From IMG/VR virus record IMGVR_UViG_3300049001_000044, positions 1-64,000 of that record: DNA of 64,000 bases. The stretch is one strand, 5' to 3'. The notes beneath the pieces are model-generated. The model was not told the DNA's origin. It did not search any database and saw only the letters and a list, made by a program, of their open reading frames with translations. A program made the translations under genes and the position numbers. The stretch's first letter is position 1. Each line of letters opens with the position of its first letter. This document shows, piece after piece, positions 6,314-63,027 of this stretch.

Positions 6314-6807
6314 TTCTCCTCCTTCAGTCCGAATTGAGGGATATGGTAGATGTGCAGCATTTGTTCCACGGACTCGTAGCTGGAGTCGTCGTCTGCGAGC
6401 GGCTTAGCACGCAGCATTTCCACGCGCTCGTCTTTTGAATATTCCACAACGTTGAATTCGATCTGCCTCAGCTGCTCATTGGCGATGCGTATTGCCTCTG
6501 TGATATGGTCACGCAGCCGGTCCGCCATCAACTTCTTTTCGATAGTGAGGGGTCCGCGCAGCTCCAAGATCTTCAGTACGCGGTCGAGCTCGCCAAAGTT
6601 GGCAGTAACTGGGTTGTCCTCAGGCAACTCCTCACCGTCCATGGGCGTCAACCTGTTGCACCATCCGTAGATGAAGCCGCCCTGCATCACGGACTGCTTG
6701 CAGGCGAAATCGTAGTGGAGCTTTCCCATCTCGGTCAGAAGGCGCACCTCTTCCAAGGTGACGTTCAGGTAAAAGCGTGGGTCGCAGCGGATCGTGATCT
6801 TGTTCAT
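6310..6807 (-). CDS. Hypothetical protein
   Basis: ATGA-type overlap with neighbours. Confidence 0.8.
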   Translation of the reverse strand: MNKITIRCDPRFYLNVTLEEVRLLTEMGKLHYDFACKQSVMQGGFIYGWCNRLTPMDGEELPEDNPVTANFGELDRVLKILELRGPLTIEKKLMADRLRDHITEAIRIANEQLRQIEFNVVEYSKDERVEMLRAKPLADDDSSYESVEQMLHIYHIPQFGLKEEK

Positions 6808-7223
6808 TTGAGTTGTCCCCTTGCCTCGTCAATGTGCCTACATGGTTTCCTGTGCTGCCCCGCAGGGCAATTGCAGATCCACATCTTCCCATCGAAGGTC
6901 ACCGAGTACTGGGCTCCCTTGGACCCTTCGATGGTAAAGGTCTGCTTGGTAAACACCTTGCCTTGTTTGAGGGCCACTCCATCAATGGCCAACACGTTGC
7001 GAATGTCAATGACGCGCAGCGGAACCATACTGCCCATTACCAACACTGAGAAGTTATTGGGGTCACGATCCGTCCTTGGCTTAGCAGCTATCTTACCCAC
7101 CACGTCGAAGGTGTCTGGGGTGACCACTGCCAACGGCCCCGTCTTCATGGGACTCTTCATGTTGCTGAGGGTGATGATGACGTCCTCACCCGCTTGAGGA
7201 AGTTTGTTGATGTTGGAGTTCAT
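6804..7223 (-). CDS. SWIM zinc-finger protein
   Basis: YSVTFDGKMWICNCPAGQHRKPCRHI (CxC-x-CxH). Confidence 0.85.
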   Translation of the reverse strand: MNSNINKLPQAGEDVIITLSNMKSPMKTGPLAVVTPDTFDVVGKIAAKPRTDRDPNNFSVLVMGSMVPLRVIDIRNVLAIDGVALKQGKVFTKQTFTIEGSKGAQYSVTFDGKMWICNCPAGQHRKPCRHIDEARGQLK

Positions 7224-7537: not shown

Positions 7538-8164
7538 TCAAAAACTGTAGTTGCGATGGGGGATCCGGACCTTGACCTGCCATGCATTGTTGCTGGTCTG
7601 CTTCAGGCAGGGGTCGAGCTTGGCATTCATCTGCTTGAAGACCAATCCCTCGTCCTCAGGTTTTAGCTTTTTCCAAAGCTCCCGGAACCCGCTAGTGAAG
7701 ACCTTGGCCACGCTCACGTACTTGTGTACCCTAATCTGGTCTCCCTCATCCACGCCGCCTTTCCAAAGTCCGTGCAAAATTGCCTGACGTTCTTCGAAAG
7801 TTTTACCGACTAGCTGTACACCCTCGTGGACGATGATGTCGAAGATGTAGAGCTGGTCCTTGATGTGCGGGGTCTTGGAGTGCACGAGCTCGGCCACGTA
7901 CACGTTCCATTCCTTGCCCTTCGTCTCGAAGAACTTCTTGTGCTCTGGTTTCGGTACCCAGGACCGGTGGTTGCCCTCGTTGATGTCCAGGTGCCGCGTT
8001 TTGAAAATGACTTCCTTACTGCGAGCGAAGATCACCGTGCAAGTTCCGTTTTTCTTGATCTGTGCACCGAATTTCTTGGTGCCTTCCAAGAAGGTGATCG
8101 CGCTTTCCGGCATTGCCTTTTCCGGGCGTGGAGGCCAGAGGTAAGTAAATTCCGAGTAGTTCAT
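7538..8164 (-). CDS. Minimal ATP-dependent ligase-type nucleotidyltransferase domain
   Basis: Motif I QIKKNGT, III VAEL, IIIa YIFDI, IV EGLVFK, V WQVKVR; no OB domain. Confidence 0.8.
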   Translation of the reverse strand: MNYSEFTYLWPPRPEKAMPESAITFLEGTKKFGAQIKKNGTCTVIFARSKEVIFKTRHLDINEGNHRSWVPKPEHKKFFETKGKEWNVYVAELVHSKTPHIKDQLYIFDIIVHEGVQLVGKTFEERQAILHGLWKGGVDEGDQIRVHKYVSVAKVFTSGFRELWKKLKPEDEGLVFKQMNAKLDPCLKQTSNNAWQVKVRIPHRNYSF

Positions 8165-46069: not shown

Positions 46070-47680
46070 TTAGAACTCTTGGATCAGCTGCGGAGCCGAG
46101 CTGTCGAAGCCAACAATGTCCAGCATACCCGGATCTTTCGGATCCGCGATGGTGAAGTTGGTGACCGAAGTACCGCACACGATCAGCTTGGACTGACGGT
46201 TGTACTGCTGACGGTAGTCGCGCAGTGCCTGGACGGGCTGCTGACGACCAGCGTAGGTTTCGTTGTCAGTGATGACCACGAACTTGTCTACACCCGACAT
46301 CTTGTGCTCGATTGCGTGGCGCATCGGCAGGGAGCAGTCGGTGGAACCCCAGCTAAAGCGCTGCATGACAGCGAGGACTTGGTCCAGGCGCATGGACGGG
46401 GAAATCTTCAGTTCACCCATGCGGGAGTTGAAGCCACCGATCCAGTAGTTGGGCTCACGCTTTGCAACTGCCAAAGCCATGACTGCTGCAACTTCAGCAG
46501 CGGTGAGGTTAGGTGCGCCGGTGACGCGAGATCCCCACATCGAACCCGAGCAGTCAACGCCGATCAGGTGGCCCTGGCCGGTGGTGTCGACGTAGTTGAA
46601 CGATTCGTAGAACGCGTCGTTCAGTGCATCGAGGATTCGCTGGTCCGGACGCCAGCTCAGGCTACCTTTGTCGCCATGACCTTGCTTGTACTGGTTGAAG
46701 GCGTTGAGGATCGTGATCGGGTGAACACGTCCACGCTTGATCGCTTCCACGTCCGTCAGCTTGGCGATTGCCAGCTTCGAACCTTCCGACAGATTGCCGA
46801 TCACACCGACGTTGGTCAGTTGACCCAGCTTTCGGATCAGAGCGGTCATGCCCATGTTCGGAAGCAGAGCATTCCAAACGTCGACATCACGCTGCAGTTC
46901 GGTTGGGATCATCTCCCACGACAGATCACGGTTGGACTCGATCAGCTGGATGGCCAGCTTCTTGTCCGCGCCGGCACGCTTCAGGGTTTCGAAGTCGACC
47001 AGCAGTTGTGGTACTTGCGCACCAGCTGCGATCGCCTCTGCACCTTTCGTTGCGTAGCGGAACATTGCGTTCTGCAGCTCGTTCTGCGGCTTAGCGTGAG
47101 CCAGACGGAGAACGTCGCGGTGAGACCAGCCATCACGCTGTTGGTACTTCAGCATCTGCAGGGCCAGCTTGTCTTCACGGCGGTTGGTGTACCACGCAGA
47201 GATACCGCGCTTTGCAGCAGCGTTCCACTTGCCCATCGAGTCGATGGCGGAGACGAACTGGAACAGCATGGTGCCAGTACGAGCGACTTTCGGCAGAGCT
47301 GCGTAAGCAGCCGAGACAGTGTCAGGGTTGCCGTTGATAGCGGCGAGAGCCAGAGCGAAGACCGCAGGGTCATTCTTCGGCGCACGGCCTGCTTCGGAGA
47401 TTTCGACGATGCGATTGACGGTACGGATACCATCGTTCTTGATGCAGTCGATGACGTTCTTAGCCGCCTTAATGGTCAGCTCTTTCTTGCCCGCGTAGTA
47501 CGAAGGCGTGTCAGAACCCAGGATCAGAAAGCGATCGAGGTAGCCCCACATGTCCAGTTGGAACGTGAAGCCGCCTGCGCTGTTACGCACCATCTCACTC
47601 TCACGACCAGGGATCGGAGCAGTTTGTGGGGTTGCGCGGGTGTTAACCTTCGGTGCGAGGATATCAGTGTAAGACGACAT
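46070..47680 (-). CDS. rsr: Ro60 / TROVE-domain RNA-binding protein (Rsr ortholog)
   Basis: RNSAGGFTF...RFLILGS...YYA; KYQQRDGWSHRDVLRLAH; LPNMGMTALIRKLG; vWA MIDAS VDCSGSM; ITDNET; LDIVGFDS. Confidence 0.95.
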   Translation of the reverse strand: MSSYTDILAPKVNTRATPQTAPIPGRESEMVRNSAGGFTFQLDMWGYLDRFLILGSDTPSYYAGKKELTIKAAKNVIDCIKNDGIRTVNRIVEISEAGRAPKNDPAVFALALAAINGNPDTVSAAYAALPKVARTGTMLFQFVSAIDSMGKWNAAAKRGISAWYTNRREDKLALQMLKYQQRDGWSHRDVLRLAHAKPQNELQNAMFRYATKGAEAIAAGAQVPQLLVDFETLKRAGADKKLAIQLIESNRDLSWEMIPTELQRDVDVWNALLPNMGMTALIRKLGQLTNVGVIGNLSEGSKLAIAKLTDVEAIKRGRVHPITILNAFNQYKQGHGDKGSLSWRPDQRILDALNDAFYESFNYVDTTGQGHLIGVDCSGSMWGSRVTGAPNLTAAEVAAVMALAVAKREPNYWIGGFNSRMGELKISPSMRLDQVLAVMQRFSWGSTDCSLPMRHAIEHKMSGVDKFVVITDNETYAGRQQPVQALRDYRQQYNRQSKLIVCGTSVTNFTIADPKDPGMLDIVGFDSSAPQLIQEF

Positions 47681-47736
47681 TAGTAATTCTCCTTAAAAAG
47701 CGGCTGCGTCCGCAGCAAATGGCAACGAAAAAGAAA

Positions 47737-48089
47737 TTCAGTGAGGCTAGCAAAGGGTGTTGTCGGAGATTTCAGCTGCTCTTCATCTCTTTCGAGTCTT
47801 GCGAAGGGCAACCTACACTTCAAAATTCCGTTAAGATAGAGTTGAAGTTCTCACGGCCTGTTTCATGGCTTATTCAGTTTGACGACGCTGACAAACGCTC
47901 ATGGATAACGTTCACATGAGAGGACGACCACCGATTGGGCGAGGACAACGATGATAGCCTCCGACCATGCCTAACTTAGTGAGCTCGAACGGTGATAAGC
48001 ACCTTGCTCCTAAGGTTTACACAATCGAAACCGCTTACAGTTCACTTGGCTATTTTAGGTAACCAACAACTACGGCTAGCTCGACTGAA
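47737..48089 (-). ncRNA. ~350-nt Y-RNA-like element directly upstream of Ro60
   Basis: Ends pair as GCUAG[C]CGU-A-GUUGUUGG-UUACCU with CCGACAAC-ACCCU-UUG-CUAGC, extended by UUCAGU-GAG/CUC-ACUGAA; TACAAT -10 just upstream; U-rich 3' flank. Confidence 0.75.
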
Positions 48090-48177
48090 ATTAAATTGTA
48101 CAACAGGGGGAGTATTGAAAAAACTGCAACCAGAACAGTTGCAGTTTCAGAAGTAGAAAAGTATATATTGGTGGGCG

Positions 48178-58323: not shown

Positions 58324-58400
58324 GGTAGGCCAAGTCGGATTCGAACCGACGATCTCGCGATTATGAGTCGCTTGCTTTAGGCCATCTAAGCTATTGGCCC
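58323..58400 (-). tRNA. tRNA-Ile2(CAT)
   Basis: GCGACUCAUAAUCGC anticodon arm as in bacterial Ile2. Confidence 0.85.
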
Positions 58401-58407
58401 CGTTGTT

Positions 58408-58590
58408 TGGTGTCTCCTGTGGGAATTGAACCCACTCTATTCATTCTTAGTAAATGACAGTGCCCTAAACCATCTCCACTCCACCCTCGCGGATGAGTAT
58501 CGGCCGATTCCAACAACCGAAATGATGAAGCTTTGAAAGGTTTAGTCCCGCTCTGCTCTAGAATCAGAGCAAGCCTTACACTAAGGAGAC
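58408..58590 (-). ncRNA. tRNA-like RNA with a 114-nt structured D-loop
   Basis: GUCUCCU/AGGAGAC acceptor plus ACCA, GUGU/GCAC D stem, UUCAAUU T loop; insertion 58464-58577. Confidence 0.75.
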
Positions 58591-58598
58591 GATGTTCT

Positions 58599-58728
58599 TG
58601 GCGCCGATGGATAGGATTCGAACCTACCGACCACCCTCGAGATAGGAGATAACCATCCACGGGCGGTTGCAATACAACAAAGATTGCGGACGATGTTTTA
58701 GGTGCTCTAACCACTGAGCTACATCGGC
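58599..58728 (-). ncRNA. tRNA-Y RNA chimera: tRNA acceptor, D and T arms with a permuted Y module replacing the anticodon arm
   Basis: GCCGAUG/CAUCGGC-G-CCA; insert AUCGUCCGC-AAUCU-UUG-UUGU-AUU-GCAA[C]CGC-CC-GUGGAUGGU-UAUCU. Confidence 0.75.
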
Positions 58729-58779
58729 ATTTTGGAAGTGATGAGTAATTATACTCTGTAGTGCATGCTACTAAAACTG

Positions 58780-58941: not shown

Positions 58942-59013
58942 TGGAGCCTCGAACTGGAGTCGAACCAGTCATTTGACCTTCGGACGGTCAATGCTAAGTC
59001 CCTTAGTCGAGAC
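58942..59013 (-). tRNA. Compact atypical tRNA, anticodon CCG (Arg)
   Basis: 7-bp acceptor, no 8/9 linker, 4-bp D stem with 5-nt loop, 6-bp anticodon stem, 3-nt variable loop. Confidence 0.6.
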
Positions 59014-61332: not shown

Positions 61333-61415
61333 TGGTCCTTGAGGTAGGAATTGAACCTACGTTGTCTTTCGACCCGCCTTATCAAGACGGTGCCTAACCA
61401 TTCGGCCACCCAAGG
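61333..61415 (-). tRNA. Long-variable-arm tRNA with anticodon GAT
   Basis: 3-bp D stem, GUC-GAAA-GAC variable hairpin, loop UUGAUAA. Confidence 0.8.
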
Positions 61416-62246: not shown

Positions 62247-62320
62247 TGGTGTGACGTCGGGTTTCGATCCCTATCTCCAAGTTTCACAGACTTGAGTGCT
62301 CCCATTACACTATCGTCACC
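62247..62320 (-). tRNA. tRNA-His(GTG)
   Basis: Loop CUGUGAA; acceptor/T junction slightly irregular. Confidence 0.82.
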
Positions 62321-62897: not shown

Positions 62898-63027
62898 TGG
62901 TCGGGAATGATGGAATCGAACCATGGTTTCTTCTGTCCAACCGAAGAGTCCTAACACAAGTCGGTGTGTTACTAACTTGCTGAAAGTATCTTCGGCCAGG
63001 AGCGTTCTGCCATTGAACTAATTCCCG
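62898..63027 (-). tRNA. tRNA-Pro(TGG) with a ~56-nt hairpin insertion in the anticodon loop
   Basis: CGGGAAU/AUUCCCG-A-CCA (C1-G72, A73); insert closed by CCGAAGA/UCUUCGG, followed by U-UGG-AC. Confidence 0.75.

What the first reader, a model, noticed from the sequence alone, without database searches (positions are those of the whole stretch)
58408..58590. tRNA-like RNA with a 114-nt D-loop, possibly a second Y-module carrier
Perfect 7-bp acceptor, ACCA end, D stem and T arm, but the D loop holds a multibranched insert (GCUCUG/UAGAGC, CUAAACC/GGUUUAG, ACUC-AUCC/GGGU-GGAGU). The insert contains UUG-UUG-GAAU-CGG[C]CGA, which can fold like the capped Ro helix of 58599..58728, though a non-bulged fold is also possible. 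The anticodon hairpin loop UACUAAG has a central CUA but lacks U33.
Basis: partly seen in the sequence, partly recalled or inferred. Interest (0 to 1): 0.75.

Follow-up and report, generated by a model that had tools for sequence, protein, structure and literature searches.

The report
Phage tRNA-like RNA with grafted domain
A 183-base RNA gene in a giant soil phage's tRNA cluster has the full tRNA cloverleaf plus a conserved 114-base folded domain in its D loop; it recurs in two other phage sequences with many compensating base changes, so it is a real and so far undescribed kind of tRNA mimic whose job is unknown.

Summary
Window 58408-58590 (- strand) encodes a 183-nt RNA with these parts:
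- a perfect 7-bp acceptor stem and an ACCA end
- U8, A9 and a D stem GUGU/GCAC
- a T arm
- an anticodon-like hairpin
- exactly 114 nt between the D-stem strands

It sits in a tRNA array of a 343-kb phage, with tRNA-like 7-8-nt spacers on both sides.

I found two independent orthologs: one in a 350-kb phage (G006) and one on a metagenome contig (L062). Across the three, 96% of pair cells are paired. 24-25 of about 60 pairs carry compensatory changes, in the acceptor stem, the T stem and three insert helices. Four parts do not vary: the D stem, a 3-way-junction core (UCGGYUG/CGGCCGA, then CUC-AUCCGC-GAG), the anticodon-like arm, and a CUAG-centred 6-nt palindrome.

The "anticodon" CUA is conserved, but position 33 is A or C, never U. 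Positions 32 and 38 co-vary (U.G to C:G), which gives a 6-bp stem with a 5-nt loop. It is therefore probably not a decoder, an intron-bearing tRNA or a pseudogene.

The Ro/Y-RNA reading is only weakly supported:
- It has GGCCGA but not the GNCGAA motif.
- It is not near the Ro60 gene.
- It is absent from four complete or near-complete Ro60-positive relatives.
- Its module does not match the neighbouring RNA.

The best reading is a non-decoding tRNA-scaffolded RNA that presents protein-binding modules.

The parts
58408..58590 (-). Whole 183-nt tRNA-like RNA gene (the 5' end is at 58590, the encoded ACCA at 58408-58411)
   Evidence: Sequence; own-model hit of 227.6 bits; orthologs score 94.7 and 76 bits with the single-sequence model
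58584..58590 (-). Acceptor stem, 5' strand GUCUCCU; pairs with 58412-58418 AGGAGAC
   Evidence: 5 of 7 pairs change on both sides among the three members
58578..58581 (-). D stem, 5' strand GUGU, preceded by U8 A9 and followed by AAGG (A14, G18, G19 equivalents, 58574-58577); pairs with 58460-58463 GCAC
   Evidence: Invariant in all three members
58464..58577 (-). 114 nt between the two D-stem strands (the D-loop insert)
   Evidence: unique in the genome, not a repeat
58547..58573 (-). Hairpin Pa; its loop carries the palindrome UCUAGA (GCUAGC in G006, ACUAGU in L062)
   Evidence: Stem covaries (helix 3); palindrome seen
58465..58545 (-). Long-range helix Pb (CUAAACC 58539-58545 with GGUUUAG 58465-58471, plus an extension) that encloses the 3-way junction
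   Evidence: 8 of 11 pairs change on both sides (helix 4)
58479..58530 (-). 3-way-junction module: P3 (CUUCAUC/GGUGGAG), P4 hairpin 58500-58520 (UCGGUUG-loop-CGGCCGA), junction UA, P5 hairpin 58486-58497 (CUC-AUCCGC-GAG)
   Evidence: P3 covaries in 5 pairs; P4, the junction and P5 are nearly invariant; model R3 finds it only in this family
58441..58457 (-). Anticodon-like hairpin UCAUU-UACUAAG-AAUGA; effectively a 6-bp stem with the pentaloop NCUAA
   Evidence: Stem invariant; positions 32:38 are U.G here and C:G in both orthologs
58419..58435 (-). T arm GUGGG-UUCAAUU-CCCAC
   Evidence: 3 of 5 pairs change on both sides; UUC.A loop is kept
58748..58778 (-). Promoter-like AGUUUUA-N15-GAGUAUAAU, 20 nt upstream of the neighbouring tRNA-like RNA (58599-58728); this would make that RNA, this RNA and the next tRNA-Met one transcription unit
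   Evidence: The same composite motif occurs at only two other places in the genome, upstream of the amber-suppressor tRNA pair and upstream of a gene whose product I read by eye as gp32-like SSB, no family search run. This is inference, not a measurement.

Best explanation
This is a gene for a stable, non-decoding tRNA-like RNA.

It is probably transcribed with its neighbours in the tRNA array. Because it keeps a 7-bp acceptor stem, the elbow nucleotides (U8, A14, G18, G19, the UUC.A T loop, G53:C61) and tRNA-like spacers, it is most likely cut out and finished by the ordinary tRNA maturation enzymes (RNase P, 3' trimming, CCA). That step is inferred.

The tRNA body then serves as a stable scaffold. 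From the variable part of the D loop, just after G18-G19, it projects a roughly 110-nt domain. The scaffold helices of that domain drift with compensation, while its 3-way-junction core (helix GGCCGA/UCGGYU, junction UA(A), hairpin CUC-AUCCGC-GAG) is held constant in sequence. A second constant surface is the anticodon-like hairpin, a 6-bp stem with an NCUAA pentaloop.

Sequence-invariant helices next to freely covarying ones are the signature of sites read by proteins or other RNAs. I therefore propose that the RNA works as the RNA subunit, decoy or tether of a ribonucleoprotein. The phage Ro60 ortholog is the leading named candidate partner, but it is unproven. The covarying 6-nt palindrome N-CUAG-N' in the first hairpin loop suggests the RNA may also pair with itself as a kissing dimer.

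Shown here: the structure, its conservation and covariation, and its patchy distribution. Inferred: processing, non-decoding status, protein binding and dimerisation.
For: - Three independent members share the architecture: window 58408-58590; G006:343500-343675 (= L020:1437-1612); L062:636-811.
- 96% of pair cells are paired, and 25 of 62 pairs change on both sides. 0 of 500 shuffles reach this, and slid controls reach at most 48% paired.
- RNAalifold run on that model-fitted alignment finds 24 of 57 pairs compensatory.
- The separate single-sequence MFE folds of the window and G006 copies show the acceptor, D-stem closure, P3-P4-P5 junction, 6-bp hairpin and T arm. L062 shows the same junction, hairpin, acceptor and T arm, but its MFE forms a local GUGUA/UGCAC hairpin instead of the long-range D stem.
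- Spacers to the neighbouring tRNA genes are 3-8 nt in all three contexts. No - strand terminator-like site was found between the tRNA-His gene at 62320 and the 57600 end of the scanned region.
- U33 is absent in all three members (A, C, C), and positions 32:38 covary as a pair.
- The Rfam tRNA model and default ARAGORN do not call it.
- The insert is single-copy.
- The phage encodes a full Ro60 (TROVE plus Ro60 vWA domains) and a CCA-adding-type enzyme.
Against: - There is no transcript evidence. Only the source metagenome holds the element, and no RNA run covers it.
- There are only three members, and the alignment used for pair counts was fitted to the structure.
- No partner protein is identified. 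The complex prediction was not run by the tool.
- The conserved CUA at the anticodon position, in phages that also carry canonical CUA suppressor tRNAs, could mean that a decoding-related role survives.
- In L062 a local GUGUA/UGCAC hairpin competes with the long-range D stem, and the palindrome there is not in a clean hairpin loop.
Confidence: 0.65

Rival explanations
1. It is a Y RNA: the GGCCGA/UCGGUU helix (P4) binds the phage Ro60 ring, and the tRNA-like body is the effector module, as in bacterial YrlA but with a different connectivity.
For: - The phage has a complete Ro60 ortholog on the same strand.
- Both genomes that carry the RNA are Ro60-positive.
- The invariant GGCCGA resembles the animal GGUCCGA site, and it fits the G7, G8, C9, G11, A12 positions that Rsr protects in D. 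radiodurans Yrn1 (PMC4201824).
- The same GGCCGA/UCGGUU helix occurs in the tRNA-like RNA at 62898-63027, which carries a perfect GCCGAAG.
- Topologically, the GA end of the helix leads into the rest of the RNA, as in Y RNAs.
Against: - The motif GNCGAAN0-1G (or CGAA) is not met: the sequence is GCCGAUA in all three members.
- The bulged register is not conserved.
- The RNA's 5' and 3' ends form an acceptor stem, not the Ro stem.
- The gene is 11 kb from Ro60 in G000 and about 70 kb away in G006, against the <=4 kb typical of YrlA (PMC4201824).
- Complete or near-complete Ro60-positive relatives G005, G007, G014 and G019 lack it.
- Co-occurrence in 2 of 2 genomes is not significant.
Confidence: 0.2
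2. It is a working, possibly low-efficiency or regulated, amber-suppressor tRNA that tolerates an extra domain.
For: - CUA occupies the anticodon position in all three members.
- A37, the acceptor stem, the T arm and a CCA end are present.
- These phages use canonical CUA tRNAs.
- An engineered 183-nt aptamer-tRNA(CUA) fusion is active in translation (PMC5397188).
Against: - There is no U33 (A or C instead).
- G38 pairs with position 32 and this pair covaries, giving a 5-nt loop.
- The discriminator and the 1:72 pair differ among members, and G006 ends in CAA.
- 15:48 is not a Levitt pair.
- TAG is an ordinary stop in this genome, and canonical suppressors already exist.
- The engineered D-loop aptamer fusion was not stable in E. 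coli (PMC5397188).
Confidence: 0.08
3. It is a tRNA gene interrupted by an intron that is removed to give a normal-sized tRNA.
For: ARAGORN in intron mode calls a tRNA here. The insert is a self-contained folded domain closed by the D stem.
Against: - ARAGORN's intron calls differ in each ortholog (Val-UAC, Leu-GAG, Ala-AGC, at different positions), so they are artefacts.
- No group I intron or ribozyme family matches at E <= 10.
- 114 nt is smaller than the group I introns I know of (from my own knowledge, not tested here).
- There is no bulge-helix-bulge at the borders.
- The genome has no splicing endonuclease and no RtcB.
- The 'mature' product would still lack a normal anticodon loop.
Confidence: 0.04
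4. It is a decoy or regulator aimed at a tRNA-directed factor. For example, it could soak up a host anticodon nuclease or another tRNA-targeting defence, or act on the amber-suppression / release-factor balance, using the invariant anticodon-like hairpin as bait.
For: - The anticodon-like arm is invariant in sequence while other stems drift.
- The element lies in a phage tRNA array.
- Its distribution is patchy and accessory, as expected for a counter-defence item. It is absent from G014, the complete genome with the most similar Ro60 found (76%), and probably from a strain about 90% identical.
Against: No target is identified. No host tRNA with this arm was found; the only two genome hits to the arm pattern are chance matches. 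It does not explain the conserved 3-way junction.
Confidence: 0.12
5. It is a dead tRNA gene carrying an insertion scar.
For: These arrays do contain broken tRNA genes next to endonuclease-like ORFs (L007:4347-4597). An HNH gene lies upstream of the G006 copy.
Against: The element is conserved over large divergence, with about 25 compensatory pairs and an invariant core. The insert is not repeated in the genome.
Confidence: 0.02

Closest known systems
YrlA-type bacterial and phage Y RNAs (Chen et al. 2014, PMC4201824; Thermus phage Yrl1/2, PMC12135203)
   Same: A non-coding RNA with a tRNA-like D arm, T arm and acceptor stem, in a genome that encodes Ro60. It also has a short GGCCGA-type helix reminiscent of the Ro60 site.
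   Different: - In YrlA the ends form the Ro stem, the acceptor is a closed stem-loop and there is no anticodon arm. Here the ends form a normal acceptor with CCA, all four arms are present, and the extra domain sits in the D loop.
- The GNCGAA/CGAA motif is absent.
- The gene is not adjacent to Ro60.
tmRNA
   Same: A tRNA-like acceptor and T-arm body carrying a large extra structured domain, processed by tRNA enzymes.
   Different: - tmRNA replaces the anticodon arm with a roughly 300-nt pseudoknotted domain that holds a tag ORF, and its D arm is degenerate.
- Here there is no ORF, the insert is in the D loop, and neither ARAGORN nor Rfam calls a tmRNA.
Engineered tRNA scaffolds and aptamer-tRNA fusions (e.g. 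Spinach-tRNA, PMC5397188)
   Same: A folded RNA module grafted into a tRNA so that the tRNA body gives processing and stability. Even the total length (183 nt) matches.
   Different: - Those are artificial, with the module in the variable loop, and in other designs that I recall from my own knowledge in the anticodon stem.
- The tested D-loop graft (between positions 16 and 18) was unstable.
- The natural RNA inserts after G18-G19 and keeps the elbow nucleotides.
Intron-containing tRNAs (bacterial group I introns in the anticodon loop; archaeal bulge-helix-bulge introns, some in the D loop)
   Same: Extra sequence inside a tRNA gene. Archaeal examples can lie in the D loop.
   Different: No ribozyme features, no bulge-helix-bulge, no splicing enzymes in the genome, and no sensible mature tRNA.
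Neighbouring tRNA-like RNAs of the same window (58599-58728 and 62898-63027)
   Same: They lie in the same arrays, have perfect acceptor, D and T arms and encoded CCA, and carry an extra domain. 62898-63027 shares the GGCCGA/UCGGUU helix.
   Different: Their extra domain replaces the anticodon arm. The module model R3 does not match them. The 58599-58728 family has its own orthologs (L012, L019).

Membership tests
Canonical (decoding) tRNA / amber suppressor | Recognised by tRNA models (Rfam RF00005 at or above 29 bits; default ARAGORN) | tested here: not met
   No RF00005 match even at E <= 10; no call by default ARAGORN
Canonical (decoding) tRNA / amber suppressor | 7-bp acceptor stem, T arm with the UUC.A loop, U8, A14, G18-G19 | tested here: met
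   Sequence and three-way alignment
Canonical (decoding) tRNA / amber suppressor | D loop of about 7-11 nt | tested here: not met
   114 nt here, and a similar-sized insert (about 107 nt by my count) in both orthologs
Canonical (decoding) tRNA / amber suppressor | 7-nt anticodon loop with U33, and positions 32/38 not Watson-Crick paired | tested here: not met
   Position 33 is A, C, C; 32:38 is U.G, C:G, C:G
Canonical (decoding) tRNA / amber suppressor | Aminoacylation and decoding of UAG | not testable with these tools
   Needs charging assays and a reporter
YrlA / Y RNA | GNCGAAN0-1G (CGAA) motif in the Ro60-binding module | tested here: not met
   GCCGAUA(A/C) in all three members; motif definition from PMC4201824 and PMC12135203
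YrlA / Y RNA | Encoded within about 4 kb of the Ro60 gene, on the same strand | tested here: not met
   Same strand, but 11 kb away in G000 and about 70 kb away in G006
YrlA / Y RNA | The RNA's 5' and 3' ends pair to form the Ro60-binding stem; the tRNA-like domain has a closed 'acceptor' and no anticodon arm | tested here: not met
   The ends form an open acceptor stem with ACCA, and an anticodon-like arm is present
YrlA / Y RNA | tRNA-like D and T arms with tertiary-pair nucleotides | tested here: met
YrlA / Y RNA | Physical binding to Ro60 | not testable with these tools
YrlA / Y RNA | Phyletic co-occurrence with Ro60 | tested here: inconclusive
   Present in 2 Ro60-positive genomes and in none of the Ro60-negative records searched; absent from complete or near-complete Ro60-positive G005, G007, G014, G019
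Intron-containing tRNA | Group I / ribozyme core, or a bulge-helix-bulge with a splicing endonuclease and ligase | tested here: not met
   No Rfam intron or ribozyme hit; PF01974 and RtcB absent; ARAGORN intron calls inconsistent between orthologs
tmRNA | tRNA-like domain plus a tag-peptide reading frame | tested here: not met
   No ARAGORN or Rfam tmRNA call on this element

The most novel reading that the evidence does not exclude
This is a previously undescribed class of phage non-coding RNA: a complete tRNA cloverleaf used by nature as a scaffold, with a conserved 3-way-junction ligand- or protein-binding domain grafted into the D loop after G18-G19, and a self-complementary loop that lets two copies pair. 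It would work as the RNA core of a phage ribonucleoprotein, with Ro60 or another tRNA-directed factor. It is not a decoder, a Y RNA of the known type, or a tmRNA.
Probability: 0.45. Interest if true: 0.75.

Novelty: new variant of a known kind. Interest (0 to 1): 0.66.

Why it matters
- Natural tRNAs are not known to carry a folded domain of about 100 nt in the D loop. An engineered D-loop graft was unstable (PMC5397188).
- A conserved natural example shows where the tRNA fold tolerates a large module. It also gives a ready-made design for tRNA-scaffolded RNAs.
- It adds a third layout to the short list of tRNA mimics with extra domains (tmRNA, YrlA).
- If its partner is Ro60 or a tRNA-targeting host factor, it would open a testable route into what the large tRNA arrays and Ro60 genes of giant phages are for.

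Tried and rejected
- **Close copies.** Exact and degenerate DNA pattern scans of IMG/VR found only G006.
- **Metagenome scan.** It returned 74 hits. 60 were the same unrelated stretch from gut metagenome contigs, 12 were scattered chance matches, and two were true: L062 and L089, whose element sequences are identical.
- **Bacterial and archaeal genome scan** with the anticodon-arm pattern gave two chance hits with no tRNA.
- **blastn of the element** against the 17 syntenic loci matched only T arms.
- **Full-length model R2** over 33 related phage records found no further member.
- **Module model R3** found no occurrence outside the family. One weak hit (E 0.04) lies antisense in the G006 Ro60 gene and is taken as chance.
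- **Mobile-element idea.** The insert is single-copy in the genome.
- **TAG recoding.** Stop-codon statistics look standard.
- **Donor tRNA.** The core is not specially close to any tRNA, including the CUA suppressors.
- **Canonical Y RNA next to Ro60.** No consistent GNCGAA or GGNCCGA motif lies upstream of Ro60 in 22 phages, and there are no Rfam hits.
- **Loose regex for the GGCCGA/UCGGYU helix** gave too many chance matches to be useful.
- **BLAST for orthologs of 62898-63027** only matched two adjacent normal tRNAs.
- **Conserved neighbouring small ORFs.** None found.
- **Ro60-RNA complex prediction.** The job was counted but not folded, so it is no evidence either way.
- **Read laying.** No RNA coverage of the element.

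Full report
**Context**

The window is the first 64 kb of a 343,229-bp virus record with direct terminal repeats, from a soil metagenome. It carries 52 ARAGORN tRNA genes in two arrays, all on the - strand. It also carries a full Ro60 ortholog at 46070-47680 (-), with TROVE and Ro60-type vWA domains.

The finding lies inside the first array. In RNA order the neighbourhood reads:
- tRNA-Met (58855-58780)
- a 130-nt tRNA-like RNA (58728-58599)
- an 8-nt spacer
- the finding (58590-58408)
- a 7-nt spacer
- tRNA-Met (58400-58323)

**The observation**

- acceptor GUCUCCU/AGGAGAC and ACCA
- U8 and A9
- D stem GUGU/GCAC
- T arm GUGGG-UUCAAUU-CCCAC
- hairpin UCAUU-UACUAAG-AAUGA
- exactly 114 nt between the D-stem strands

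The RNA folds far better than shuffles: -67.5 kcal/mol, z = -4.0, 0 of 200. Standard detectors miss it. Default ARAGORN makes no call, and there is no Rfam tRNA match even at E <= 10.

**Relatives**

A flanking 110-aa ORF led to 17 loci from phages mostly in the 100-385-kb range, several only short fragments, all with large tRNA arrays. blastn found no copy of the element there.

Searching the whole records found one ortholog in G006, a 350-kb phage with terminal repeats, at 343500-343675 (= L020:1437-1612). A degenerate pattern from the conserved core then found a third member on two metagenome contigs whose element sequences are identical, L062:636-811 and L089.

All three members sit 3-8 nt from ordinary tRNA genes.

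**Structure and covariation**

I built a single-sequence covariance model (R1) and used it to align the three members. The results on that alignment:
- 96% of pair cells form standard pairs.
- 25 of 62 pairs change on both sides.
- 0 of 500 column shuffles reach any of the observed measures.
- Sliding the partners by 1-3 columns drops pairing to 38-48%.

RNAalifold run on the same model-fitted alignment gives essentially the same structure, with 24 of 57 pairs compensatory. The separate MFE folds of the window and G006 copies show it too. L062 agrees except that a local GUGUA/UGCAC hairpin replaces the long-range D stem. The caveats are that there are only three sequences and that the alignment is fitted to the model.

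Helices that drift with compensation:
- the acceptor stem (5 of 7 pairs)
- the T stem (3 of 5)
- the first insert hairpin Pa (4 of 9)
- the long-range helix Pb (8 of 11)
- P3 (5 of 8)

Parts constant in sequence:
- the D stem
- P4 (UCGGYUG/CGGCCGA, with one U.G to C:G change)
- the UA(A) junction
- P5 (CUC-AUCCGC-GAG)
- the whole anticodon-like arm

The helix ACUC-AUCC/GGGU-GGAGU is not kept in G006; it is replaced by P3 plus P5. The bulged 'Ro' register of P4 needs a second UUG that both orthologs lack.

**The tRNA frame**

U8, A9, A14, G18-G19 (AAGG, AAAGG, ACGG), the UUC.A T loop and G53:C61 are kept, so the elbow can form. The insert starts right after G19, in the naturally variable part of the D loop. 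I infer from general tRNA structure, not from a model built here, that a domain there can project from the body without breaking the D-loop/T-loop contact.

The 'anticodon' CUA is conserved. However, position 33 is A, C, C, and positions 32:38 are U.G, C:G, C:G. The arm is therefore a 6-bp stem with the pentaloop NCUAA. The discriminator (A, A, G), the 1:72 pair and the 3' end (CCA, CAA, CCA) vary. 15:48 is not a Levitt pair.

**What it is not**

- **Pseudogene or insertion scar:** contradicted by the covariation, and the insert is single-copy.
- **Intron-bearing tRNA.** ARAGORN's intron mode gives a different amino acid and intron site in each ortholog. There is no intron or ribozyme family hit. 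The genome has no splicing endonuclease and no RtcB.
- **Recoding tRNA.** TAG behaves as a normal stop (48 of 292 long ORFs end in TAG, and read-through lengths match those of TAA and TGA). Canonical CUA tRNAs already exist at 195112-195264 and in G006.

Size alone would not exclude decoding, because an engineered 183-nt aptamer-tRNA(CUA) works in vivo (PMC5397188). The loop features argue against it.

**The Ro / Y-RNA idea**

Points in favour:
- Ro60 is encoded in both genomes that have the RNA.
- The invariant GGCCGA resembles GGUCCGA and fits the G7, G8, C9, G11, A12 positions that Rsr protects in Yrn1 (PMC4201824).
- Another tRNA-like RNA of the window (62898-63027) has the same GGCCGA/UCGGUU helix, extended to a perfect GCCGAAG.

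Points against:
- The defining GNCGAA/CGAA motif is not met.
- The topology differs from YrlA.
- The gene is 11 kb from Ro60 here and about 70 kb away in G006.
- Model R2 finds no copy in 33 related records, including complete or near-complete Ro60-positive G005, G007, G014 and G019.
- Module model R3 matches neither the neighbouring RNA at 58599-58728 nor anything else.
- No canonical Y-RNA motif lies upstream of Ro60 in 22 phages either, so the Ro60 partner in this clade is simply unknown.

**Distribution**

The RNA is patchy. G014, the complete genome with the most similar Ro60 found (76% identity), lacks it, while the more distant G006 has it. In a sediment run holding a strain about 90% identical, a contig follows the window up to the 5' end of tRNA-Met (58400) and then continues with unlike sequence. 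This suggests the element is absent there, although these are low-coverage contigs. An HNH endonuclease gene lies just upstream of the G006 copy. This looks like an accessory cassette of the array.

**Extra features**

The loop of the first insert hairpin holds a 6-nt palindrome whose outer bases covary: UCUAGA, GCUAGC, ACUAGU. It cannot pair within one loop, so a loop-loop dimer is a reasonable reading. In L062 its structural context is less clean.

A composite promoter-like motif (AGTTTT[TA], a 15-16-nt spacer, GAGTATAAT) lies 20 nt upstream of the neighbouring RNA. It occurs at only two other places in the genome: upstream of the CUA tRNA pair and upstream of a gene whose product I read by eye as gp32-like SSB, with no family search run.

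**Verdict**

This is a real, conserved, structured tRNA-like RNA gene of a layout I could not find described. It has all four tRNA arms plus a conserved 3-way-junction domain in the D loop.

The most likely mode of action is a non-decoding RNA that is processed like a tRNA and presents two sequence-constant surfaces to a partner (confidence 0.65). Ro60 is the leading named candidate partner (about 0.2). A decoy for a tRNA-directed factor (about 0.12) and a residual suppressor function (about 0.08) remain open.

There is no expression evidence.

Noticed in passing
window 58599-58728 (-): The neighbouring 130-nt tRNA-like RNA (normal acceptor, D and T arms and CCA, with the anticodon arm replaced by about 75 nt) has clear orthologs at L012:6866-6992 and L019:7212-7336. 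A wastewater metatranscriptome contig is identical to it over 58611-58736, while adjacent tRNAs in that run are diverged.
   Followed up: partly
window 62898-63027 (-): Another tRNA-like RNA (Rfam tRNA 36.3 bits, with 69 nt in place of the anticodon loop region). Its long helix carries GCCGAAG, a perfect match to the YrlA Ro60-site motif, on a GGCCGA/UCGGUU helix identical to P4 of the finding. BLAST found no orthologs.
   Followed up: partly
window 58945-59013 (-): A 69-nt tRNA-like element with a perfect acceptor stem and T arm, a D hairpin with a 3-nt loop, and an anticodon-position loop GUCCGAA (the animal Y-RNA-like GUCCGAAGG string). ARAGORN does not call it.
   Followed up: no
G000:195112-195264 (-), outside the window; also L127:5215-5287 in G006: Canonical amber-suppressor tRNAs (loop CUCUAAA): two tandem copies in this phage and one in G006. 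Even so, stop-codon statistics show no TAG recoding in this phage; G006 was not examined for recoding.
   Followed up: partly
window 58748-58778 (-); G000:146652 (-) and 195296 (-): A shared composite promoter-like motif, AGTTTT[TA]-N15-16-GAGTATAAT, occurs at only three places. They lie upstream of the two odd tRNA-like RNAs, upstream of the suppressor tRNA pair, and upstream of a gene whose product I read by eye as gp32-like single-strand-binding protein.
   Followed up: partly
window 61333-61415 (-); L003:5707-5891, 6577-6923, 7859-7945; L019:1925-2019; L012:3667-3760: Many class-I tRNAs of this phage clade (Ile, Asn, Glu, Asp, Lys) are 83-95 nt long. The one I inspected (tRNA-Ile, 83 nt) has a 12-nt variable region.
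   Followed up: partly
L007/L008:4347-4597: A tRNA 3' half (T arm, acceptor strand, GCCA) directly follows what I read by eye as a small endonuclease-like reading frame. It looks like a tRNA gene disrupted by a homing-endonuclease insertion.
   Followed up: no
L020:1613-1700 (G006), right after the ortholog: Another odd tRNA-like element (acceptor GUAGUUG/CAACUAC and a normal T arm, with a non-tRNA interior). An HNH endonuclease ORF (L127:3998-4420) lies just upstream of the tRNA-Asp that precedes the ortholog.
   Followed up: no
window 47681-48177 (-): A roughly 500-nt gene-free stretch upstream of the Ro60 gene, after a terminator-like hairpin. It has no Rfam hit and no canonical Y-RNA motif. 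It could hold an undescribed RNA.
   Followed up: partly
window 58393-58606, sediment run X2: A strain about 90% identical covers the flanking tRNAs and ORFs but not the finding. Its contig leaves the window sequence exactly at the 5' end of tRNA-Met (58400).
   Followed up: partly
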